Part shown: positions 39,443 through 56,001 of the stretch, one piece after another
How positions within the stretch are numbered: the first letter of the stretch is position 1
Layout of the letters: each line of letters begins with the position of its first letter
Virus record (IMG/VR): IMGVR_UViG_3300044680_000280
Location: 248,001-312,000 of that record
Reading direction: 5' to 3' (one strand)
DNA length: 64,000 nt
The notes under the pieces: generated by a model
What the model was told of the DNA's origin: nothing
The model's database searches: none
Seen by the model: the letters and a program-made list of their open reading frames with translations, nothing else
Position numbers and translations under genes: made by a program

Positions 39443-39760
39443 ATGGACACCCTTTCAACCCAAATCAAAAACCTCGCCGCTCAATTCGCCGACGACGTCG
39501 TCACGGCCTTCCTGTCCTCGTCTCCGAACGAGATTCAGAGCCTGACGAGCCGCCCCCGAACCACCACCACCGCCGCTCGCGCCCCGCGGACCACGAATCC
39601 GGCAACGCGCTCTGGACGCCTCCCCAAAATCCAGAGTCGATTGTATCAGGTCGGAGACCGCTTCTACCTCGACACGAGCGACGGCCGGACCTACACCAGC
39701 ACCCGAAAGCGAGACCTCATCCGACGCGCCGCCGCGCGCGGTATCGAAGTCAACGTCTGA
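39443..39760 (+). CDS. small basic putative DNA-binding protein
   Basis: Helical N-terminus, Thr/Arg-rich linker, GRLP motif; GGTGTA 10 nt upstream. Confidence 0.6.
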   Translation: MDTLSTQIKNLAAQFADDVVTAFLSSSPNEIQSLTSRPRTTTTAARAPRTTNPATRSGRLPKIQSRLYQVGDRFYLDTSDGRTYTSTRKRDLIRRAAARGIEVNV

Positions 39761-39925
39761 AAGATTTTTGACCTAATTCTCCGGTTCGACCCGCGCGGGT
39801 CACCCGGGAGGGTCAAAGACGGGGAAAGCAGCCCGCACAACGCAGTGAATTAAAAAGTAGCTGCTAGCTTGACGCCTCGGAGAGACGAGGAGGCCTAACC
39901 TCTAATCACCCCACAATGGGGGACA

Positions 39926-40633
39926 ATGCCCGTCGAAACCTACACTGTCTTGTCGACCTTCACGATCTCCCCTCTCCCTGGAGAAACTAGGGAGAGGGTC
40001 TTCACGGAAGGCGGTACCCTATCTTACGATAGGACCATAATCTCGCGGTACACCGAACAACTTGATCAGGCCCTCTATAACGGGTGGATCGTCCGACTCG
40101 TCCCTCTTGAACAGGACGACGGAAATGACGGAGACGATGGGGACGACGGAGACATTCGTCGGTGGAGCTCCGATCCTCAAACCCAAGAAAGAATCGCTAT
40201 ACGAGATTGGAATCGTCGCCGCGACCGTACGACAATTCTAGGTCCGGATGAGCCTCGATCTCCCTACATCAGTGCGATTGATTATTCGTACTCTTCGACG
40301 AGTAACGAGATTCTAGTACCGCTCCCAGAAACCCACAGCCTCGTGATGGATGGCGATCACCTCGTCGGACGGGCTCAGCAAGAATCCGATGAAAGCGAAA
40401 GCGACGATAGTTCGATTCCCATCGAATCCCCTCCTATCGAAGTTGCCGTGGTTCACATTTCCAAGAAGTACTTGGAACGTTGGGAAGGACTGCACGGGAA
40501 CACCCTTCGGGCCGAGCTCACCGCCGCGGTCACCAAATTCATGACTTTGGAAACGGACGACGAAGCGGAAACCCTTCCGAAAGAGCCAAAAAAGTCTCAC
40601 TGGGAACATGTGCTGGAAGAGGTAGCGGAATGA
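39926..40633 (+). CDS. acidic hypothetical protein with C-terminal WEHVL tag
   Basis: Ends PKKSHWEHVLEEVAE. Confidence 0.7.
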   Translation: MPVETYTVLSTFTISPLPGETRERVFTEGGTLSYDRTIISRYTEQLDQALYNGWIVRLVPLEQDDGNDGDDGDDGDIRRWSSDPQTQERIAIRDWNRRRDRTTILGPDEPRSPYISAIDYSYSSTSNEILVPLPETHSLVMDGDHLVGRAQQESDESESDDSSIPIESPPIEVAVVHISKKYLERWEGLHGNTLRAELTAAVTKFMTLETDDEAETLPKEPKKSHWEHVLEEVAE

Positions 40634-40827
40634 CACCGATCGATACGGACGGGGAACTCGGGCAAGCCATGATGGCCGCCATTCGGGAAGCCCGAACCCT
40701 GTGCGAAAGAACTGGGAATACCCCGGAGAACGAAGCCCTGCGGAAGGCTATTGATGATATGGATCAGATCGTCATCCGAGGCATTCGCAAAGATCTCGAG
40801 GCACTGGCAAGAAGCCCCGTCAACTAG
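40630..40827 (+). CDS. small helical protein
   Basis: ATGA overlap. Confidence 0.55.
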   Translation: MTPIDTDGELGQAMMAAIREARTLCERTGNTPENEALRKAIDDMDQIVIRGIRKDLEALARSPVN

Positions 40828-44514: not shown

Positions 44515-44955
44515 CTAACCCTCGTCCTCGAGCATGTGTTCCCACACGGACTTTTTGGGTGACCGCGACTCCACGGGTGGCTGTTCTTTTAGAGAACTAA
44601 GCCACCGTCGGCCACGCTCATACGCTATTTGAGCCGTCGTCGCGGGTCCCTCTGGACCCATCCCATTCAACTGCTCGTCCGATACACGGCGAAGCCAATC
44701 CATAACATCATCGTTCACCCAATTCGGTTGTACCTCACGGGGCTCGAGAGGAAGAGGGGTCGTTAACGCTCTCGTTTGGCTGACCTCCGACGGTCTTTCG
44801 AACATCGAGCTTGAGACGGCCTCATCCGAACGCCTTGTGGCGATCTCCGTCCGTGCGCCCAACTCATCGAGTGATCGAAGAATACGGTCGAGACGCTCGA
44901 TGATCGCTTGATCAAATCGTTCGAAATCAAGCCTATCCGTATCCTCAGACGGCAT
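44515..44955 (-). CDS. hypothetical protein with C-terminal WEHML tag
   Basis: Starts MPSED; ends PKKSVWEHMLEDEG. Confidence 0.7.
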   Translation of the reverse strand: MPSEDTDRLDFERFDQAIIERLDRILRSLDELGARTEIATRRSDEAVSSSMFERPSEVSQTRALTTPLPLEPREVQPNWVNDDVMDWLRRVSDEQLNGMGPEGPATTAQIAYERGRRWLSSLKEQPPVESRSPKKSVWEHMLEDEG

Positions 44956-47658: not shown

Positions 47659-48159
47659 TCATTCGTCCTCTTCGGGACAGGACGAATCCCCGATGGCCGC
47701 CGCCGTGATCTCCCTCACTCGTTTCTGCTCCCGTTTCAAAAACTCCTCAACCGTAATGCCCAGCTCCCCCGCCCGCTTCTCCGCCGTCTCCCGTACCGAT
47801 GGCCATTTCACACGGTCCCGAAGAGGACCCTCCTTTTCCTTGGGAACCACGACGATTCCCCGTCGGAGCGTCTCCTCCGCGGTCACCATCCATCGCAATT
47901 CGCGAACGATGGATCGCTGAACTCGCTCCGACGGTTCCACCTTCCCCTCTATCCACCGAGTAACCGCAAACGGAGCCACTTCCAAGAGCTCCGCCATTTG
48001 TTCCACGCTTACCCCGCTGAGCGATATCCCGTCCCGAACAAGGTCGGCAAAGCTCCCCTCGTCCTCGAATAGGAACAGCCTCGCCCTCGTCAGGTACGAA
48101 CCCAAATCGCCCAGTACGTCCATGATCCCGAAGATACGCGGAAACAATCTCCGGGTCAA
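47659..48159 (-). CDS. XRE-type HTH transcriptional regulator
   Basis: SGVSVEQMAELLEVAPFAVTRWIEGKVEP. Confidence 0.7.
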   Translation of the reverse strand: MTRRLFPRIFGIMDVLGDLGSYLTRARLFLFEDEGSFADLVRDGISLSGVSVEQMAELLEVAPFAVTRWIEGKVEPSERVQRSIVRELRWMVTAEETLRRGIVVVPKEKEGPLRDRVKWPSVRETAEKRAGELGITVEEFLKREQKRVREITAAAIGDSSCPEEDE

Positions 48160-48831: not shown

Positions 48832-49067
48832 CCCCTCTCCCACTTCCCCTCATCATTCCACCTTCCAGACCCAAGAAGGAACGACGGCGACCCAGGCTCC
48901 CCCTCAAATGGGGCCCTCGAGTTCCCCTCGGGTCGGGACAACCCGTGCTTTCTCAGCCGTCGACCCCGACGGGCATTCTCAATGTCCCACATCACAAGAG
49001 CCACAAAGACCGCCGCGCCCCACAGCACCATCGAAACCGCGCCCCGTACCCGTTTCCAAATGCCCAT
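48828..49067 (-). CDS. small membrane protein
   Basis: GGTGTA 9 nt before ATG 49067; TM segment. Confidence 0.55.
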   Translation of the reverse strand: MGIWKRVRGAVSMVLWGAAVFVALVMWDIENARRGRRLRKHGLSRPEGNSRAPFEGEPGSPSFLLGSGRWNDEGKWERG

Positions 49068-49113
49068 GGGAAAGGTTACACCGAAGACGAACAGCGGGCG
49101 GGGGCTCGATGAT

Positions 49114-49186
49114 GTCGACGAACATCGAACCCAGCTCGATGTTCGTCGACGCAGTTCGATGAGTGGCTCGACGAACATCGAACCCA
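49114..49186. repeat. 15-bp perfect inverted repeat plus 19-bp direct repeat
   Basis: GTCGACGAACATCGA-N7-TCGATGTTCGTCGAC; TCGACGAACATCGAACCCA again at 49168-49186. Confidence 0.9.
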
Positions 49187-49801
49187 TGCCCGCGAAGCAG
49201 GGCGGTGGGGGTTTCCCCTTTTGGTCAAAAAGTATACCGACCTAAAAAATTCTGTTATTTTTCAAGGGCTTACCCAAAAAGGAATGACGTATGGGGTTAT
49301 CCGTATTACCATCTAACCGACCCGGGACCATACGTATACTCAATATGCCCCTTTCCCGAGATCTGTGAGGGCGAGTAAGATAATGGAGCGGTTCTACGCT
49401 CACTGTAACTAGACCGCCTCGATCGGTATACCCGACCCCGCCCTGCTTCGCGGGCCCGGGTCGATGATCCCCACTGAACAGACTTACCATACAGCACTGA
49501 ACTACCTACATCGCGCCATCTGTTCAGCACTGGTCACGTCAAGGGCTGAACAGAAGCCCTCACTGAACGCTGAGCTCAATCAGGTGTGGGCGAAAATCAC
49601 ATGTACCCACCTCTGGGCGATTCGAAGAGCGAGCTCCAAGATGGGACCCAAAAGGGGCGGCGGGGGTCGCACTACGGTTCAGTTCGCTACACACGAACGA
49701 ACCTACACACCTACCTACGAACACGGGCGGGTCGTGTGTGTGGTGGGCGGCGCCCAGGTATATATACCAGTGTTCGTAGAGGGGGGAGCGGTGAAGGTAT
49801 A

Positions 49802-50111
49802 TGGGGAACAAACACAAGCCCGCGGAGCAGGGCCCGGTGTATGTGATTCTATGGGCAATAATTGAAGCTGGCCCTCTTGGGCTACCCCGCAAGTGGCGTA
49901 TGAGGTTGGGGTCGGACCACATCGTTCACCTCGAGTGGAGCCACGACCACATCACCTGGACGACCGTCCCTCGAGTGGCCCTCCCGACGACGTATGGAAC
50001 GGGCACCTACGTCACATGGGACCTCGTGGGGGACCTGATGCAAGAAGGGGTTCCCGGAGCGCCCGCTTCCATTGGGGAACAAGCACAAGCCCGCGAAGCT
50101 GGGCCCGGTGT
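49802..50111 (+). repeat. 39-bp direct repeat pair (3 mismatches)
   Basis: 49802-49840 and 50073-50111. Confidence 0.9.
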
Positions 50112-50268
50112 CTGAACTGTTAACCGAGCCTGGGGTCAGAACCCCTAACGCCGCGCCGAGGATGCCCTCAGAGGGGCTTTGGGAGGACGCCTAGGCTTGG
50201 AGCCGTCCATATCGGGCGATGGGCTGTTGAGCCGGCTGATGTCCATCTCGGCTCTCCTTGCAGAAACG

Positions 50269-50392
50269 GTCAGTGAGCCCCGATTTAGGGTTGCGAGCCC
50301 TAGACCCACCCGAGGATACCTCCTGCGCTTCCCACGCGTAGGCACTTCAATGGTACCGGCCCTACCTCGGAAGCCCATCGGGGCTCACTGAC
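50269..50392 (-). ncRNA. candidate structured RNA closed by a perfect 16-bp stem
   Basis: GTCAGTGAGCCCCGAT/ATCGGGGCTCACTGAC; TTGAAC-N16-TTTACT ends 6 nt before 50392. Confidence 0.55.
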
Positions 50393-50453
50393 ACAAGTAG
50401 TAAAGCGCCGGGAAGGCGGAGTTCAAGTGGATGAGCTCAAGGTTTCGCTCTTT

Positions 50454-50642
50454 TTACTCGCCAGTGTCCTGTAGCTCCCACAACGGCTGTGTGTTCAGCA
50501 CGAGAGCCCGCACCGCCGCCGCGAGTGCGGTGACCGCGTCATTGAGGCGCCCGTTCTCGCATTCGCCCAGGTCCTTCTCCACCTGCTCCACCTGCTCGAG
50601 TATCCGTAGCCCGGCGACCGACAGCGTGTTTACCTTCGCCAT
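50454..50642 (-). CDS. small helical protein
   Basis: AAAGGAA upstream of ATG. Confidence 0.6.
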   Translation of the reverse strand: MAKVNTLSVAGLRILEQVEQVEKDLGECENGRLNDAVTALAAAVRALVLNTQPLWELQDTGE

Positions 50643-50670
50643 GTCTCGATTCCTTTCGTAGAAAAATCTC

Positions 50671-50832
50671 TCAGCTCATCCACCACTGAAGCAGGCGAGT
50701 CCACCAGCTCGGGAGATGGGCTTGCACGTGACTGCGCCAGGCATACTCCGCCAACTCGCACCGTACGATGAACTGTTTGTCGCAAATGGGGCAGCGCACG
50801 GCACCTCTGGGGAGGTCTACATCGAGCCCCAT
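50671..50832 (-). CDS. C2H2-like zinc-finger protein
   Basis: CPICDKQF...WRSHVQAH; ATG overlaps upstream stop. Confidence 0.55.
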   Translation of the reverse strand: MGLDVDLPRGAVRCPICDKQFIVRCELAEYAWRSHVQAHLPSWWTRLLQWWMS

Positions 50833-51005
50833 CAGTGGCCACAGACCGTGCATTTGACGCGGTCGCTCGGGGAGCCGTTCCGATTGATCCGCTCCTCCGT
50901 GTGACCGCAGGCAAGGACGAACGTCCAATGGTTCGCGGGAACGGCACGACGGCTCCGACGACGAACGATCGTGGTCTCGACCTTGAAAGAGCTGATGACG
51001 TCCAT
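50832..51005 (-). CDS. small zinc-binding protein
   Basis: LACGH...CTVC. Confidence 0.5.
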   Translation of the reverse strand: MDVISSFKVETTIVRRRSRRAVPANHWTFVLACGHTEERINRNGSPSDRVKCTVCGH

Positions 51006-51365
51006 GGTGAAAGTACAGCTCGGAGCGGGGCGAAGTTCAAACTTTGGGCTCATTCACCTGAGCTCGCAAAGCGATCGCTTCTTTTCGTGCGGACCAAGCA
51101 TCGGCGAACAGGGCATTAGCCGACCATGCGTCATGGTTGTCAGCCGCGGCCTCTGCCCGCTCTTCCAAGGCCGCCGCCTCTCGGTCCAACTCGTCGGCTC
51201 TCAACTCGTTCATGGTCCGTCCCTCCTGAAGGTAGTAAAGCGCCCGGACGATGAAAGTTCAATCCCCCGCCCCTTGGGGGAGTCTAGACCGAGCCCATTT
51301 TCCTCGAGCTCCGGCCGCCGAAAACGTTTCATTGCGGGGAACCTCACTTTTACCTACATGCAACG

Positions 51366-51430
51366 CCTCGAGCCCGAAGGAGCTCCGTTTCCCCGGTGTA
51401 GGCTAAGTCCCCTCGAGCCCGAAGGAGCTC
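51366..51430 (+). repeat. 20-bp direct repeat CCTCGAGCCCGAAGGAGCTC x2 flanking a GGTGTA motif
   Basis: Copies at 51366 and 51411; GGTGTA at 51395-51400. Confidence 0.9.
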
Positions 51431-51481
51431 GGTTCTCCATTTGGGCTTGCACAGCCGAAAAAATCCGGCAGATTGTGTCGG

Positions 51482-51592
51482 GTAAAGGTAACGTCACACC
51501 TTGAGATGACGAGACCTGATCAGTCGTATGGCGTAAAGGTAACGTCACACCTTGAGATGACGAGTCGTATGGCGTAAAGGTAACGTCACACC
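51482..51592 (+). repeat. GTAAAGGTAACGTCACACC x3 (two copies extend to 32 bp)
   Basis: Copies at 51482, 51533, 51574. Confidence 0.9.
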
Positions 51593-51714
51593 CCTCTCGG
51601 CAGCCGTCGAAAGCTTCAGCCGAGAGGTCTCGATATGGCAGCTCAGAGCCTTCGTATCTGAGACTTGTAACGACTGATCAGGTGGAGGTGGCCCGATGAG
51701 CCCCTCGAGCGGGT

Positions 51715-51743
51715 TTGAACCTTGGACGGTTCCGCGCTGTACT
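51715..51743 (+). promoter_or_regulatory. class-2 promoter TTGAAC-N17-TGTACT
   Basis: 6 nt before ATG 51750. Confidence 0.75.
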
Positions 51744-51749
51744 TCTCCC

Positions 51750-52157
51750 ATGAGCACTGAGACAACGACGATGGAAACGGCAACGACAACGACCCTCGAG
51801 AGCCTCTTGGCGGGTCACGAAGTTTCTGAGCCGCGTGTAGTCAGCCTGCAACTCGCGATTGAGCTCGGAGCTGACAAGGCGACCCTAGAGCGCATCCGCG
51901 ACGCAGCGAAGGTGAACCGACGTGATTTCATGGTCTTACCGGCTCACCGATTCGAAAACCTGAGCCGAGGGCGCGGCTGGGCCCGCAAGGGTCGAGGGGA
52001 CAACGTGGCATGGGGAGAGCGGTGCGACGGCGGCTACCGCGTCGGCCCTGGCCGCTGGTCAGTCGGCGCTACGGACGGATACAGCCGCAAGGCCTCCGTC
52101 GAGTGGCAGGTCGAACAGATTGTCGTCGGCGCCGAGACGTGGACGATCGCGAACTGA
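51750..52157 (+). CDS. hypothetical protein
   Basis: Class-2 promoter, leaderless spacing. Confidence 0.7.
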   Translation: MSTETTTMETATTTTLESLLAGHEVSEPRVVSLQLAIELGADKATLERIRDAAKVNRRDFMVLPAHRFENLSRGRGWARKGRGDNVAWGERCDGGYRVGPGRWSVGATDGYSRKASVEWQVEQIVVGAETWTIAN

Positions 52158-52176
52158 ACCCCGTTTCAAACGACAC

Positions 52177-52205
52177 TTGAACCCCGTTCGGTTCCGCGCT
52201 GTATT
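52177..52205 (+). promoter_or_regulatory. class-2 promoter TTGAAC-N17-TGTATT
   Basis: 7 nt before ATG 52213; shares GGTTCCGCGCTGTA with the 51715 promoter. Confidence 0.75.
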
Positions 52206-52212
52206 TCCTCCC

Positions 52213-52500
52213 ATGAGTACCGAGGCAGGAATCGAAGCGTTCAACGACGAGGTGGGAGCCATCGGTGACGCTCGCCGATGCCCCCGTCACCCGGGAGTGA
52301 AGACCTCGTCTGATGACGGTCTGTTCGATGGCGTCTGCGGCCTTTGCGAGGCTGACATGGCGGATGATACCGATCGTTGGGACGTCGACTCGGAGAACCC
52401 GCATCGTAGCCAGTGTGGGTACGGGGTCGGACGATTCCCGCCCGGCCCGCGCCTCAGTATTGCGTGTGTCCCGTTCGAAGACGACGGGATCCCGTTCTGA
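52213..52500 (+). CDS. Cys-containing hypothetical protein
   Basis: CPRH...CGLC. Confidence 0.65.
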   Translation: MSTEAGIEAFNDEVGAIGDARRCPRHPGVKTSSDDGLFDGVCGLCEADMADDTDRWDVDSENPHRSQCGYGVGRFPPGPRLSIACVPFEDDGIPF

Positions 52501-52590
52501 GGACTTGAACCCCGTTCGAGCACGATTCACGGTGGGTGTGAAAAGTTCGAAAAAACCTCAACCTCGAGCGGCAACCGCCGTTCTATCTAA

Positions 52591-52848
52591 GTGAAGGGAC
52601 AAACGACAATGTCAGCTCTCGAAACCATCAAGCAGAACGGCAGCATCCTCGAAGACCTCATCAAGCCCGTCAAGGTATTCAAGGGCCCGTGGACGAGCTC
52701 GGACGAGTCCATCACCACCCCGACCGAAGTTCACCTCTACGCGGACGGCTCCGCCATCGCGTGCCACCCCGACCAGGGTGACTTCCCCTACGAAACCCTC
52801 TTCTTGCTCCAGAGGGCCTACCTCATCACCATTCCCGAAGCGTTGTAA
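52591..52848 (+). CDS. hypothetical protein
   Basis: ORF followed by a GC hairpin. Confidence 0.6.
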   Translation: MKGQTTMSALETIKQNGSILEDLIKPVKVFKGPWTSSDESITTPTEVHLYADGSAIACHPDQGDFPYETLFLLQRAYLITIPEAL

Positions 52849-53020
52849 TCCCCCTTGCCCCCCTTCGGGGGCTCGGGTTACGCTCCCGATGCTCTCACCG
52901 GATGGTCCGTGAGAGTCGACCCCGTCGTAAGGACCCTGCGCAGGCCTCACGACGGGGTTTCCTAATTTGCACGATCCCCTAACGTGATACGCTGAGCTCC
53001 TCGTAGAGCCCCGCATTCGA

Positions 53021-53068
53021 AGAAGCCCCGTGACGTCGCTCAGCGACTTCGCGGGGCTTCTGCTTTTT
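53021..53068 (+). terminator. intrinsic terminator-like hairpin
   Basis: AGAAGCCCCG...CGGGGCTTCT followed by GCTTTTTG. Confidence 0.6.
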
Positions 53069-53764
53069 GTCCCCAGCCTGGGGACAACCTGGGTGTTGCC
53101 TCAAACCCGCCCGTTGCACGACATGTACAACACCACGAATTCATGTCATACATTTTGACACACCTGAACAACGGTTCCCCTCGAGCGATAGGCACTGAAC
53201 AGAGACCCTCGTTCAGTAGCTGAACATAAATACAGCACTGTTCGCACGGTTGGTTCAGTGCCACCTGTCCGCGAAGCGGGACAGGTGCGAGCTGGAGGCG
53301 AGCTCCCACATATCTCGAGGGTAATGCCGTATTCGCTTGACTTTGTCATGACCGAGTTTCTTAAGCGTGTTGAGGCACATCCCCAAAAGAAATCAAGCTC
53401 TTCCGCCGAAGGACGGACCGATTTATTCCTCCGGGATTCGAAATCCCAACTCATCCGTGGGCTTGACCTCTACCATGAGTGGAGGGAACCTACCTTCGCC
53501 CTGCTTCGCGGGCCCGTGGTAGACGGTTAGATGGTTCGATGGACCGACGGGGTGATGGGTAGATGGATCGACGGGGTGACCGGAGAGCGTACCGCGAGAT
53601 TCCCCTAGCCGCACCGGTTCGAATGGTTAAGCTTGCCAGTAAGGGTATCAAGCTTCCTTTGGGGAGCCCCTAGAGGGGTCGGCCTTGCTCTTGAGGTTGG
53701 CCCTTCGCCATTTCCAGCCCTGCTTCGCGGGCATGTAGAATGGTGGGTGGTGTATACTGGAGTC

Positions 53765-54001
53765 ATGTTCAATCCGTCCTCACCTGAGGTCAAGGTGTGC
53801 GGGGAGGCGGGTCAGCGACTGTATGACAAACTTGAGGCGGAGGGGGTCTCTCTGATGGCGGTCGGGGTGGGCGTCAGTTGGAACGGACAGCAGCCTGCGA
53901 TCCACCTGATGCTTGTCCGGAGCACGGACAGACCGATTCCTGAGACCTTTGAGGGGTACGAAGTCCACTGTCGCGTCACGGGGCGGATTGTGCCGCTGTG
54001 A
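53765..54001 (+). CDS. small alpha/beta protein (homolog of 57340-57576)
   Basis: GGTGTA 10 nt upstream; AVGVG...IP..FEGY.V...VTGRIVPL. Confidence 0.7.
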   Translation: MFNPSSPEVKVCGEAGQRLYDKLEAEGVSLMAVGVGVSWNGQQPAIHLMLVRSTDRPIPETFEGYEVHCRVTGRIVPL

Positions 54002-54073: not shown

Positions 54074-54598
54074 GTGGAGCCTTTACACGGTGGACTCCTA
54101 GATGAGAGGAATTTTAGAGACCGCGGCTCGGTCCCCTTCGAACTCGACGAGCCGGTACAGGTTGAGGCTGTGGGAGGGGAGAGTTGGGAACTACCTACGG
54201 GAAAGTACTACATTAAAATGGTTAGATATTACCTCAGGATTGAAACCGTCGTCCTAGAGGCAGCACCTCTCTCTGTAGCGGAGCTGGAAATCGTTATCGC
54301 TAAAAACTTCGAGGAACGATGCTCGCTCACACGTAGAGTAGACGGTCGTATTTTAAGCCGTACATGTGAGTTCAAACACCCTACACAATTGGGAGAATTC
54401 CTTTACGGCCCTAAATGCATCCAACCTGGGTGTAATGGGGTCATCTCCTCATTTACCTTCGAAGCGGAAGAACAGATCTCCCTGTGTCCCAAACATACAA
54501 CTCCTAAAGGTTCATTCCACTTAGGAGCTGACGATGACGATGACGATGACGATCAAAAACCTCCACGTTACGACCGCATGAGAAGGCAATTCCAATGA
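54074..54598 (+). CDS. hypothetical protein with Cys/His motif and poly-Asp
   Basis: GGTGTA 9 nt before GTG; CIQPGC...CPKH. Confidence 0.6.
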   Translation: MEPLHGGLLDERNFRDRGSVPFELDEPVQVEAVGGESWELPTGKYYIKMVRYYLRIETVVLEAAPLSVAELEIVIAKNFEERCSLTRRVDGRILSRTCEFKHPTQLGEFLYGPKCIQPGCNGVISSFTFEAEEQISLCPKHTTPKGSFHLGADDDDDDDDQKPPRYDRMRRQFQ

Positions 54599-56001
54599 GT
54601 GGCCAAGTCACCGAAGCCGTTTACCAAACGCCAGAGCCGAACACACCTATCGTGCTCTACGAAGGTGACATGGAGCTCAAACAGGGAGACGGTGAAAGCG
54701 AGACACACATCTGGGGTAAAGGTAGGATCACTTACCACTGGCAACCCACACCGAGTATTGAGTGGGAGCTGCCTATGGAAAAGTATATAGGCCGTCCAAA
54801 GTTCGAGAACTGCACAATAACCATCCCCTCACGTTTCTGTGTATTTCCGGCTTACGTATCCCGAATTAGACCTGGTAAGGTTTCTGGCGATGCAATTGAA
54901 GCGGTACTATCCAACCATAATTGGTACTCACCCAAAGTTCAACAATTGCGGTTACATATACCCAATTTTCTCACCGATCGGTGGGGTTCTTGGATTGCTG
55001 CACCGAATGAACATTGCGAGTACGCTGGGCGAACTAAAGTTGAACTATCCGACTGGACACTGACTTTGGACTTGTTGGGGCATATTCCTCGGAATCGTAG
55101 AGATGGGGGACATATGGTCACCCATGTTATGGTCGTTGAGCGACCCGATAATTCGGAATTCGACCCGAACATGGCGAGGGAGCTTGTGGAGTCCCTGTAC
55201 AGTGTCTTCTCTTTCTGTACGGGGCAAGCTACGGGTGCAGTGCTTGTGACGGGGCACAACCTGATGGGTCAAGTTTGCTGGAAATGGTGGCGTACCCTTC
55301 ATATCGACGCCTACCAATCTCGTACCACATGGCTTCCGTCTGATTACAAGGGGGCGGGCACTCAACATCATCCTTCTTTCTCAAGACAAGATGCTTTTAA
55401 AGCGCTTTTACGCGGCTTCACGGAGGTAACCTCGATTTCTCCTATCGCCCGTCGTACCCTTTCTACCTGTGTGTATTGGTATTTGAAGGCACGAGATCAA
55501 TCTGTTGAGAGTGCCGTGATCTTCTCAGTTCTTATCCTGGAGACTCTGACATGGTTCGACAGCGTCATCACTCACGGTGAGGACCCCAACGCCTTTGAAG
55601 CTTCTCCAGCCAAGGTGTCTGCGTATTTGGAGACTCTTGAGATACCTCATGATGAGCTGTACGAAGGTCAGGGCGCTATCGAGCGTCTTATTGAGATGCG
55701 AGACACAATGACGCATCCGCCAAAAGGAGGGGATTTCAAAGAGTACCCTGACATAATGCGAGATCACGTCCTCGCCTTGTATCTGATGGAGAGGGCCTTT
55801 CTAAGAGTCTTGGGCTACAACGGGTACATGTTCGATCGCAGGACCGGCCGAGACGTTGTGGTGGGTGTCCTGCCAGAACCACCCACCGTTAGTGGAGAGG
55901 AACTAGAAGAGATAAGACAGAACAGGATGAGAGGACCTCAGCAGGTCGGGGAACACGAGTGGCATATAGGGGGCCCCATCGACCAGTCTCGTAAGCCCTG
56001 A
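54595..56001 (+). CDS. ApeA/YopA-like protein with putative C-terminal HEPN RNase
   Basis: Beta-rich N-terminus, helical C-terminus with R-x4-H motif RDTMTH; AT-richer DNA. Confidence 0.5.
   Translation: MSGQVTEAVYQTPEPNTPIVLYEGDMELKQGDGESETHIWGKGRITYHWQPTPSIEWELPMEKYIGRPKFENCTITIPSRFCVFPAYVSRIRPGKVSGDAIEAVLSNHNWYSPKVQQLRLHIPNFLTDRWGSWIAAPNEHCEYAGRTKVELSDWTLTLDLLGHIPRNRRDGGHMVTHVMVVERPDNSEFDPNMARELVESLYSVFSFCTGQATGAVLVTGHNLMGQVCWKWWRTLHIDAYQSRTTWLPSDYKGAGTQHHPSFSRQDAFKALLRGFTEVTSISPIARRTLSTCVYWYLKARDQSVESAVIFSVLILETLTWFDSVITHGEDPNAFEASPAKVSAYLETLEIPHDELYEGQGAIERLIEMRDTMTHPPKGGDFKEYPDIMRDHVLALYLMERAFLRVLGYNGYMFDRRTGRDVVVGVLPEPPTVSGEELEEIRQNRMRGPQQVGEHEWHIGGPIDQSRKP

What the first reader, a model, noticed from the sequence alone, without database searches (positions are those of the whole stretch)
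49188..53732. Covarying bulged GNA-triloop hairpin (4 bp + 2 bp + GNA + 1-nt bulge) clustered in a poorly coding region
Family A, GCCC-GC-GAA-GC-A-GGGC, occurs at 49188(+), 49440(-), 53498(-) and 53717(-). The 49818(+) copy changes only the loop (GGA, still GNA). The 50089(+) copy changes only the bulge (T). Family B, GAGC-CC-GAA-GG-A-GCTC, at 51370 and 51415 has different stem bases but identical geometry. Minus-strand GCCC-CC-GAA-GG-G-GGGC (52857) and GGCC-CC-GAA-GG-G-GGCC (5060) also fit, but may be ordinary terminators. Established knowledge: C-GNA-G mini-hairpins such as d(GCGAAGC) are unusually stable in ssDNA and occur in phage G4 origin and N4 virion-RNAP promoter contexts. Several copies sit just upstream of GGTGTA (49836, 51395, 53749). 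Inference: a structure-recognised cis element for replication initiation, DNA entry/packaging or hairpin-dependent transcription.
Basis: partly seen in the sequence, partly recalled or inferred. Interest (0 to 1): 0.75.

Follow-up and report, generated by a model that had tools for sequence, protein, structure and literature searches.

The report
Repeated bulged hairpin in phage control region
A 16-base bulged hairpin is repeated around two mirror-image gene-free control modules in a 407-kb peat phage; it most likely punctuates transcription, but a role in starting DNA replication is not excluded.

Summary
GCCCGCGAAGCAGGGC occurs 6 times (at most 1 mismatch) in window 49188-53732, against 0.1 expected, and 8 times in the whole 406,734-bp myovirus-like phage genome. 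The geometry itself (4 bp, GC, G-purine-A loop, GC, one 3' bulged base) is over-represented. A paralogous copy at 53267 keeps it through a compensatory C:G to T:A change.

The copies are organised. Two gene-free gaps of about 0.95 kb each hold an inverted module of about 0.45 kb: repeats, hairpin, a 215-236-bp spacer, inverted hairpin, repeats. The gaps flank six small genes with strong host-type promoters. The left spacer holds the most AT-rich 100 nt of the genome. The local G-C skew minimum falls on the 53498 copy.

Four copies carry U-rich tails or abut promoters, like the terminator-promoter cassettes (PeSLs) of T4-type phages. My best reading (0.4) is an RNA-level terminator, insulator or leader hairpin of such cassettes. 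The main rival (0.25) is a single-strand initiation signal at a replication origin. An N4-type hairpin promoter is not supported, because no phage RNA polymerase was found.

Family B and the 52857 and 5060 hairpins are ordinary RNA hairpins on the opposite strand. No relative conserves the region, so function remains inferred.

The parts
49188..49203 (+). Family A copy (GAA strand on +). It is the outer hairpin of the left module. On the minus strand it reads hairpin-ATG.
49440..49455 (-). Family A copy, the inner hairpin of the left module. It has a significant 6-bp outer helix.
49818..49833 (+). Family A1 copy with a GGA loop, part of a 42-nt repeat. On the minus strand it is terminator-like, with the stem extended by G.U pairs and a U-rich tail.
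50089..50104 (+). Family A1 copy with a T bulge, part of the same 42-nt repeat. It is terminator-like on the minus strand, downstream of the leftward operon.
53267..53282 (+). A' paralogue GTCC-GC-GAA-GC-G-GGAC, the inner hairpin of the right module. It has a compensatory change in the lower stem, a different bulge base and a contiguous 5-bp outer helix.
53498..53513 (-). Family A copy in the right module. The local minimum of cumulative G-C (53507) falls on it.
53717..53732 (-). Family A copy 20 nt upstream of TATACT-N6-ATG of gene 53765-54001. It forms a perfect 19-bp inverted repeat with 49185-49203.
49114..49186 (.). Three copies of TCGACGAACATCGA, two of which form a perfect 15-bp inverted repeat. 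This is an operator- or iteron-like block next to hairpin 49188.
49204..49439 (.). Left spacer. It holds the most AT-rich 100 nt of the genome (49219-49318, 36% GC), three GTATAC motifs and one sigma-70-like promoter match pointing left (49258 to 49231).
49470..49580 (.). Cluster of CACTGAAC/CTGAACAG repeats (left module).
53190..53260 (.). Cluster of CACTGAAC/CTGAACAG repeats (right module). It is collinear with the left cluster in the inverted alignment.
53514..53577 (.). Repeats containing GGTTCGATGG, related to the left TCGATG repeats, directly after hairpin 53498.
51370..51430 (-). Two family B hairpins. On the minus strand as RNA they form a perfect 6-bp stem with one G.U pair and a CUUC loop.
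52857..52872 (+). Perfect hairpin with a 4-nt CUUC loop (it contains the letters UUCG), 8 nt after the stop of gene 52609-52848. It is an ordinary 3'-end hairpin.
50426..52210 (.). Central divergent promoters of the family TTGAAC-N16/17-TGTAYT. The leftward ones are at 51262, 51040 and 50426; the rightward ones at 51715 and 52177.

Best explanation
Family A is a structure-constrained stem-loop that punctuates a block of small early or accessory genes transcribed by the host RNA polymerase.

Proposed mechanism:
- The strand that reads GCCC-U-GC-UUC-GC-GGGC folds as RNA.
- In that form it acts as a terminator or insulator in front of the next promoter, or as a hairpin at the start of a leader.
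- In this it resembles the composite stem-loop/promoter cassettes (PeSLs) of T4-type phages.
- The copies stay nearly identical because the cassettes duplicate and recombine.

What is shown:
- The hairpin and its geometry are non-random.
- Four copies (49818, 50089, genome 333316 and 390751) share hairpin plus a U-rich 'TTTGT' tail or a promoter.
- Two of these lie exactly where the leftward operon ends.
- The phage has a strong host-type promoter family and no RNA polymerase of its own was found.

What is inferred:
- The other four copies and A', which bound the two inverted control modules, also act on RNA, as attenuators or leader hairpins of outward and inward transcripts from the spacers.
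- The repeats beside them are operators of a regulator, possibly the weak XRE-like HTH protein at 47659-48159.
For: - The terminator scan flags 50107-50086(-) and 49836-49815(-): a 7-bp stem and then a T-rich tail.
- On that strand the stem is lengthened by two G.U pairs that would be A.C on the other strand. It folds at -16.2 and -14.1 against -14.2 and -12.6 kcal/mol.
- These two copies lie downstream of the leftward genes driven from promoters 51262, 51040 and 50426. They mirror the three hairpins that close the rightward genes: 52857, 52919-52958 and 53021-53061.
- At genome 333316 the hairpin abuts the -35 of a consensus promoter (TTGAAC-N17-TGTAAT-N7-ATG).
- At 53717 it lies 20 nt before TATACT-N6-ATG.
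- The related CCGAAGG hairpins sit after genes or a tRNA on that same strand: 52857, 5060, and genome 245177, which is 8 nt after tRNA-Gln.
- No phage RNA polymerase or sigma factor was found.
- The setting is a set of ORFan genes with no family hits. A relative's contig diverges right after a promoter repeat at 52520.
- PeSLs are near-identical, lineage-specific stem-loop plus promoter units, eight in about 5 kb, in ORFan-rich regions, and they are tested terminators (PMC2839356, PMC4122927).
Against: - Four of the eight copies (49188, 49440, 53498, 53717) have no U-rich tail.
- A terminator needs neither an exact 16-mer nor a fixed bulge.
- The preferred loops (GAA, GGA closed by C-G) are those of stable DNA mini-hairpins, not of stable RNA loops. 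Elsewhere the genome uses UUCG/UACG-type loops.
- G.U variants of the lower stem are not enriched.
- At genome 333316 no gene lies upstream on the strand in question, so nothing obvious needs terminating.
- One exact copy lies in frame inside the recombinase gene.
- No RNA contig covers any copy.
- The inverted two-module layout with repeats and an extreme AT-rich spacer is not a PeSL feature.
Confidence: 0.4

Rival explanations
1. Replication origin with single-strand initiation signals. Each module would be an origin unit. An initiator binds the repeats and the AT-rich spacer melts. The two opposed mini-hairpins, one on each strand with their 3' sides facing the spacer, stay folded on otherwise protein-coated single strands. 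They mark where a primase starts the two diverging leading strands, as ssiA/ssiB do in RSF1010 oriV or hairpin I does in the phage G4 origin.
For: - The layout is repeats, hairpin, 215-236-bp spacer, inverted hairpin, repeats, present twice in inverted order.
- The left spacer has the most AT-rich 100 nt of 406 kb.
- The local cumulative G-C minimum lies at 53507, on a copy, and skew flips sign across the region.
- The loops are of the DNA mini-hairpin type, GCGAAGC/GCGGAGC and CCGAAGG, the latter as in ssiA (PMC13037366).
- The geometry is enriched with Watson-Crick pairs only.
- GGT lies within 8 nt 3' of the GAA-strand hairpin in 9 of 15 cases (1.55 expected, p = 4e-6). This gives 5'-GTN-3' sites like those used by T7/T4-type primases (my own knowledge, not tested).
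- The phage encodes a DnaG-type zinc ribbon and a DnaB-like helicase.
Against: - The primase and helicase genes lie about 257 kb away, near the global skew minimum at 44,847.
- Skew here also follows the divergent gene orientation, so it is not independent evidence.
- The right spacer is only mildly AT-rich.
- Copies at 49818, 50089, genome 333316 and 390751 have no origin-like context.
- No RepB'-like or Prim-Pol primase was found, although the RepB' control search was silent.
- The 'iterons' include a perfect palindrome typical of an operator.
Confidence: 0.25
2. Binding site of a regulator, on double-stranded DNA or on both DNA and RNA. The 16-mer would be an operator at early promoters, and the hairpin potential would be a side effect of its partial symmetry, or would be used a second time in the mRNA leader.
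For: - The 16-nt core is exactly conserved while the flanks are unrelated.
- At genome 333316 it lies between two divergent promoters, filling the spacer of one and touching the -35 of the other.
- At 53717 it is centred about 40 nt upstream of the predicted start, where the -35 is missing.
- A weak XRE-type HTH protein is encoded 1 kb away.
Against: - Only the outer 4 bp are symmetric.
- The compensatory variant A' and other stems with the same geometry but different sequence fit folding better than a fixed protein site.
- Positions relative to promoters differ between copies.
Confidence: 0.1
3. Recombination sites of the single Xer-like tyrosine recombinase. Inverted pairs would flip the 232-bp promoter-bearing spacer or the whole 4.5-kb block (an inverton or shufflon-like switch), and direct pairs would excise cassettes.
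For: - A 24-nt inverted repeat flanks 232 bp, and a perfect 19-nt inverted repeat flanks 4,513 bp.
- The central 8 nt are asymmetric and conserved, like an overlap region.
- One tyrosine recombinase is present, and it carries an exact copy inside its own gene.
Against: - Only 4 bp of each arm are conserved, where 9-13 bp are usual.
- The recombinase gene lies 89 kb away.
- Contigs from other runs and a second assembly all show the reference orientation at the junctions they cover.
- The compensatory variant argues for folding.
Confidence: 0.08
4. Hitch-hiking repeat without a function of its own. A short palindromic piece would have been copied along with promoter and terminator modules by illegitimate or homologous recombination.
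For: - Five copies are identical and three differ by one base, as after recent copying.
- The related 363-kb phage has neither the region nor the hairpin family.
Against: - The flanks of four copies are unrelated right up to the 16-mer.
- The geometry is enriched with other stem sequences, and 4 of those 7 lie within 13 kb of the cluster.
- The placement in the two modules is ordered and mirror-symmetric.
Confidence: 0.1
5. N4-type hairpin promoter read by an injected or phage-made single-subunit RNA polymerase on extruded template-strand hairpins.
For: The core GCGGAGC/GCGAAGC with a purine-centred 3-nt loop is the N4 promoter heptamer (PMC13037366, PMC4496689).
Against: - There is no PF00940 hit, though that control search was silent.
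- None of the 12 largest proteins matches an RNA polymerase family.
- There is no conserved sequence between hairpin and start.
- The stem is bulged and the copies lie in both orientations in the middle of the genome.
- A host-type promoter family drives the local genes.
Confidence: 0.02

Closest known systems
PeSLs (promoter-early stem-loops) of T4-type myoviruses (PMC2839356, PMC4122927)
   Same: - Near-identical, lineage-specific stem-loops tied to a conserved promoter.
- Clustering: eight in about 5 kb in RB49, six in 4.5 kb here.
- Location in an ORFan-rich plastic region of a large myovirus, with an AT-rich stretch.
- A junction between relatives at a cassette repeat.
   Different: - Here the stem-loop is a 6-bp bulged hairpin with a G-purine-A triloop.
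- Half of the copies lack a U tail or an adjacent promoter.
- Copies form inverted pairs in two mirror-image modules with extra repeats.
- One copy is inside a coding gene.
- Terminator activity is untested.
ssiA/ssiB of RSF1010 oriV and the G4-type complementary-strand origin (PMC13037366)
   Same: - A C-GAA-G mini-hairpin on a GC stem with an irregularity.
- Two copies on opposite strands beside iterons and an AT-rich stretch.
- A short conserved trinucleotide 3' of the hairpin.
   Different: - No RepB'-type primase was found.
- The DnaG-like primase gene is far away.
- There are eight copies, some in promoter or terminator contexts.
- No sequence similarity beyond the loop, and no functional data.
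Phage N4 early promoters (PMC4496689)
   Same: A GC-rich heptamer GCG(A/G)AGC forming a 3-nt loop closed by C-G, with a few copies clustered in one region.
   Different: - No virion RNA polymerase was found.
- The stem is bulged.
- No conserved -17 to +1 block.
- Copies lie in both orientations and in an internal location.
Lambda-type immunity region (OL/PL-nutL and OR/PR-nutR)
   Same: - Two inverted control modules about 4 kb apart with repeated protein-site-like sequences.
- Divergent outward genes.
- A GCCC...GGGC hairpin near the start of outward transcripts.
- A recombinase elsewhere in the genome.
   Different: - No boxA, and no N-like or repressor protein was recognised.
- The hairpin has a different loop type.
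- Whether the phage is temperate is unknown.

Membership tests
N4-type hairpin promoter | 5-7-bp uninterrupted stem with a 3-nt purine-centred loop closed by C-G | tested here: inconclusive
   The loop and closing pair are present in all copies, but the stem is 2 bp + bulge + 4 bp.
N4-type hairpin promoter | Conserved sequence from -17 to +1, including the spacer to the start site | tested here: not met
   The flanks are unrelated among the four module copies. Only GGT is enriched, at variable distance.
N4-type hairpin promoter | Giant virion RNA polymerase of the T7-like family | tested here: inconclusive
   PF00940 gave no hit, but its control genomes were silent too. The 12 largest ORFs, up to 2706 aa, hit only tail, baseplate and helicase families.
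Single-strand initiation signals (RSF1010 ssiA/B, G4 type) | GAA-type mini-hairpin on a GC stem in the template strand | tested here: met
   PMC13037366 for the reference sequences
Single-strand initiation signals (RSF1010 ssiA/B, G4 type) | A pair on opposite strands next to iterons and an AT-rich segment of an origin | tested here: met
   Both modules have opposed hairpins, repeats and a spacer. The left spacer is the AT-richest 100 nt of the genome. That this is an origin is not shown.
Single-strand initiation signals (RSF1010 ssiA/B, G4 type) | A cognate primase and demonstrated priming | not testable with these tools
   A DnaG-type zinc ribbon and a DnaB-like helicase exist at genome 39.6-40.8 kb. 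The RepB' search was silent, and so was its control.
PeSL-type terminator/promoter cassette | Conserved stem-loop directly coupled to a conserved promoter between small genes | tested here: inconclusive
   The coupling is clear at genome 333316 and 53717. The promoter is degenerate at 49818 and 50089 and absent at 49440 and 53498.
PeSL-type terminator/promoter cassette | Many near-identical copies clustered in an ORFan-rich plastic region | tested here: met
   Six copies lie in 4.5 kb. All ten local proteins lack family hits. The related phage lacks the region.
PeSL-type terminator/promoter cassette | The stem-loop terminates transcription | not testable with these tools
   Two copies pass a consensus terminator scan. 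No read-level RNA data were available.
Intrinsic terminator | GC-rich hairpin followed at once by a U tract, downstream of a gene | tested here: inconclusive
   Two copies pass the scan, 49818 and 50089. By eye, genome 333316 and 390751 also have U-rich tails. The four module copies do not meet this.
Tyrosine-recombinase site / inverton / shufflon | Inverted repeats flanking a promoter-bearing segment, plus a recombinase | tested here: met
   A 24-nt inverted repeat flanks 232 bp containing a promoter-like match. A 19-nt inverted repeat flanks 4.5 kb. One Xer-like recombinase is present.
Tyrosine-recombinase site / inverton / shufflon | Conserved recombinase-binding arms of about 9-13 bp around a 6-8-bp overlap | tested here: not met
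   Only 4 bp are conserved on each side.
Tyrosine-recombinase site / inverton / shufflon | Both orientations present in a population | tested here: inconclusive
   Contigs of other runs and a second assembly show only the reference order at the junctions they cover. The data were contigs, not reads.
REP element / RAYT | Y1 (HUH) transposase and a conserved GTAG next to the palindrome | tested here: not met
   There is no PF01797 hit, and the controls worked. GTAG is present beside only two copies.
parS centromere | ParB protein and a symmetric 16-bp palindrome | tested here: not met
   No ParB_N hit, and the controls worked. Only the outer 4 bp are symmetric.
Lambda-type nut site | boxA plus a boxB hairpin in the leader of early transcripts, and an N-like protein | tested here: inconclusive
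   No shared boxA-like block lies upstream. The position in leaders rests on weak promoter matches. The protein was not tested.

The most novel reading that the evidence does not exclude
The two mirror-image modules are a bipartite replication origin of a jumbo phage. Opposed, bulged DNA mini-hairpins followed by GGT would serve as structure-recognised start signals for a DnaG-type primase. This would be a phage counterpart of plasmid ssi signals, with further copies used as priming or pause marks elsewhere.
Probability: 0.25. Interest if true: 0.7.

Novelty: new variant of a known kind. Interest (0 to 1): 0.45.

Why it matters
Control regions and origins of jumbo phages from uncultured hosts are almost unknown. 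This region offers a compact, well-bounded test case:
- two inverted modules;
- a host-type leaderless promoter family;
- one hairpin whose shape, rather than only its letters, is kept.

If the hairpin is a cassette terminator, PeSL-style modular shuffling would extend beyond T4-type phages. If it is a priming signal, it would give the first sequence rule for where such a phage starts DNA synthesis. It would also show DNA mini-hairpins at work in a double-stranded DNA genome. Either way the 16-mer is a simple handle for reporter, footprint or pull-down experiments.

Tried and rejected
- **Searches for relatives.** The exact 16-mer in IMG/VR gave only 31 singleton, chance-level hits. Two flanking proteins gave no related loci. 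Megablast against phages and plasmids found nothing.
- **Homologues of protein 51696-52157.** They occur in many unrelated phages without such hairpins.
- **The nearest relative.** This is the 363-kb G001, with 71% identity in the helicase. It has no homologous region and only 9 scattered geometry hits.
- **Exact-protein contig look-up.** It returned only identical copies of this genome.
- **Two-hairpin pattern in metagenome contigs.** It gave 14 loci. Most look like chance matches in GC-rich DNA (judged by eye from the flanks), and a few are unrelated long palindromes.
- **Covarying outer helices.** I first thought these were present, but they are not significant in most copies. I withdrew the claim.
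- **G.U asymmetry as a way to pick the folded strand.** There was no signal in the lower stem.
- **Integrase pseudogene fragments as the source of the repeats.** None were found.
- **Genome end.** The record's ends lie elsewhere, and another assembly spans the region.
- **Second origin-like gap at the global skew minimum (44.8 kb).** That stretch is densely coding.
- **Other families.** Rfam gave nothing relevant. No ParB, Prim-Pol, Y1 transposase, Rpb2 or sigma-70 was found.
- **RNA runs for the left module.** None was listed.
- **My own gene caller.** It was too weak in this region, so I used the source's gene calls.

Full report
**What the window is.** The window is bases 248001-312000 of a single 406,734-bp virus record. 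It comes from peat metagenomes and has 55% G+C. Tail-sheath, tail-fibre, baseplate and helicase families identify a myovirus-like jumbo phage. Almost all other proteins, including the five largest, have no Pfam family. The genome carries 38 tRNA genes, one Xer-like tyrosine recombinase, a DnaB-like helicase and a DnaG-type zinc ribbon. No T7-like or multisubunit RNA polymerase and no sigma-70 domain were found. The T7-like search had silent controls.

The 16-mer GCCCGCGAAGCAGGGC occurs at the six stated places, with the stated loop and bulge variants, against 0.10 expected. The genome has two more copies. The strict geometry (4 bp, nC-GNA-Gn', one 3' bulged base, 4 bp) occurs 35 times against 4.6 +/- 2.6 in simulations. 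The mirror geometry occurs 3 times, and 12 of the 35 lie in this 4.5-kb interval.

Split by core, the picture is as follows:
- GCGNAGC with the 3' bulge gives 14 hits, 7 of them outside family A, where about 0.7 is expected from 184 cores. The 5'-bulge form gives none.
- Four of those seven lie within genome 294-307 kb.
- With inner stem GC/GC the loops are GAA (4 distinct sequences) or GGA (6 distinct), against seven other singleton loops.
- The heptamer GCGAAGC alone is not enriched, so the whole structure is what is special.
- Of the eight genomic 16-mers at three mismatches from the consensus, three keep all six pairs. The reversed control gave none.

I withdraw one early impression. The outer helices around the cores are no better than shuffled flanks, except at 49440, 53267 and 58881.

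**Family B and the 'possible terminators'.** The CCGAAGG-core hairpins are different in kind. On the opposite strand, as RNA, family B forms a perfect 6-bp stem with one G.U pair and a CUUC loop. The hairpins at 52857, 5060 and genome 245177 lie a few bases after a gene or a tRNA on that same strand. These are ordinary RNA 3'-end hairpins.

**Anatomy of the region.** The source's gene calls leave two gene-free gaps, 48832-49800 and 52849-53764. Between them lie six small genes, none with a family hit.

- The centre carries a promoter family, TTGAAC-N16/17-TGTAYT, often followed after 6-8 nt by ATG. It fires leftward from 51262, 51040 and 50426 and rightward from 51715 and 52177. 28 of 29 strict matches in the genome lie in 272-406 kb.
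- Each gap holds one module. Aligned in inverted order, the modules are collinear: CTGAAC repeats, a hairpin (GAA strand), a 215-236-bp spacer, a hairpin (opposite strand), TCGATG-type repeats.
- At the inner position the left module has the consensus hairpin. The right module has GTCC-GC-GAA-GC-G-GGAC, a compensatory change with a different bulge base.
- The left spacer contains the most AT-rich 100 nt of the whole genome.
- The G-C skew is strongly negative up to 49 kb, flat across the region and positive beyond. The local minimum at 53507 falls on a hairpin.
- Genes to the left run leftward and genes to the right run rightward. Skew and transcription therefore cannot be separated here.

**Two sub-families.**

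*Sub-family A1.* The copies at 49818, 50089, genome 333316 and genome 390751 share more than the core. On the strand that reads GCCCTGCTTCGCGGGC, each is followed by a T-rich 'TTTGT' tail or by a promoter.
- The first two pass the terminator scan. They gain two G.U pairs on that strand only and sit where the leftward operon ends.
- The copy at 333316 abuts the -35 of a consensus promoter and fills the spacer of a divergent one.
- The copy at 390751 lies in frame (AAREAGL) inside the recombinase gene, about 170 nt past the stop of a convergent ORF. No other piece of that gene is repeated.

*Sub-family A2.* The copies at 49188, 49440, 53498 and 53717, together with A', bound the modules and lack U tails. 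49188 and 53717 form a perfect 19-bp inverted repeat that includes an ATG.

**Which molecule folds?**

Evidence for RNA on the 'TTC' strand:
- the A1 tails and G.U pairs;
- the placement of A1 at the end of the operon;
- the phage's apparent reliance on host RNA polymerase.

Evidence for DNA on the 'GAA' strand:
- The loop type matches the extraordinarily stable DNA mini-hairpins found in N4 promoters (GCGGAGC, with GGA or GAA loops), RSF1010 ssiA (CCGAAGG) and the G4 origin (PMC13037366, PMC4496689).
- G.U variants of the lower stem are absent.
- GGT lies within 8 nt 3' of the hairpin in 9 of 15 cases, where 1.55 is expected. ACC is enriched on the 5' side, so part of this may be pairing.

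In single-stranded form the two left copies can also pair with each other (z = -7), as any inverted repeat would. RNA contigs from one peat metatranscriptome cover 50684-50918 and 52575-52853 but no hairpin copy. No RNA run was listed for the left module.

**Relatives.** None helps. The nearest phage found (363 kb, 71% identity in the helicase) lacks the region and the hairpin family. Other assemblies of this phage are identical. Run X10 holds a 94-98% relative as single-read contigs. One of them departs from the window at 52520, directly after a promoter repeat, as expected of cassette shuffling.

**Verdict.**
- The best-supported reading (0.4) is that family A is the stem-loop of lineage-specific terminator/promoter cassettes in an ORFan-rich early region. 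The closest known parallel is the PeSLs of T4-type phages: eight in about 5 kb, with an AT-rich stretch and a tested terminator function (PMC2839356, PMC4122927).
- This reading does not explain the fixed bulge, the DNA-type loops, the GGT or the mirror-image modules.
- The main rival (0.25) is an origin with opposed single-strand initiation hairpins, as in RSF1010 oriV.
- An operator (0.1), recombinase sites (0.08), a functionless repeat (0.1) and an N4-type promoter (0.02) follow.
- The element is real and orderly, but its function is inferred.

Noticed in passing
window 50269-50392 (minus strand): A 16-bp perfect long-range stem closes a structure of about 125 nt just downstream of the promoter at 50426 and upstream of a 33-codon ORF. 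As RNA it folds at -69.8 kcal/mol with z = -3.5. It has no Rfam match. It could be a candidate leader or small RNA.
   Followed up: partly
window 51475-51605, with 14-nt inverted repeat 51514-51527 / 51670-51683: Three tandem units containing GTAAAGGTAACGTCACACC lie between the central divergent promoters. The two family B hairpins follow on the minus strand. This may be a leftward non-coding transcript.
   Followed up: no
genome-wide; window 50426, 51040, 51262, 51715, 52177: The promoter family TTGAAC-N17-TGTAYT often has ATG 6-8 nt after the second hexamer, which would give leaderless messages. 28 of 29 strict matches lie in genome 272-406 kb.
   Followed up: partly
genome 390106-390939 (L040:9106-9939): This is the only tyrosine recombinase, Xer-like and 277 aa. 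It carries an exact in-frame copy of the 16-mer (AAREAGL) and has a consensus leaderless promoter.
   Followed up: partly
genome 34758, 93667, 313369, 332985, 335968, 352027, 386911: A second dispersed repeat, GTCCCCATTGAGGGGTGATTG, contains a small hairpin. One copy lies 330 nt from the 333316 hairpin. There are also four copies of the UACG-loop hairpin GCTCGGTACGCCGAGC.
   Followed up: no
window 54595-56001: A 468-aa ORF lies in a 50% G+C island. The source tables mark it YopA_M/YopA_C, and it contains an R-x4-H motif of the HEPN kind. It may be an accessory or defence-type gene.
   Followed up: no
window 51696-52157; loci L044, L047, L049, L051: This small protein has 140 homologues (45-69% identity) in many unrelated phages. 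In the four phage contigs examined it follows an intergenic gap, and in three of them the preceding gene is on the opposite strand. It has no known family.
   Followed up: partly
window 52503-52520: A contig from run X10 matches the window from 52520 onward, but its first 51 nt are unrelated. The break falls directly after the promoter repeat ACTTGAACCCCGTTCG.
   Followed up: no
window 49801-50115: This called 104-aa ORF begins and ends inside the two copies of the 42-nt hairpin repeat, so it may not be a real gene.
   Followed up: no
L084:6871-7134, L087:3767-4024 (gut metagenome contigs): These are long palindromic elements of about 260 bp whose two ends read GTCCGCG(A/G)AGCGGGGC, 15 of 16 bases like the A' hairpin. 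Their relation to this phage is unknown.
   Followed up: no
genome 44847 and 39584-40778: The global minimum of cumulative G-C lies in densely coding DNA beside the DnaG-type zinc ribbon and DnaB-like helicase genes, all on one strand.
   Followed up: partly
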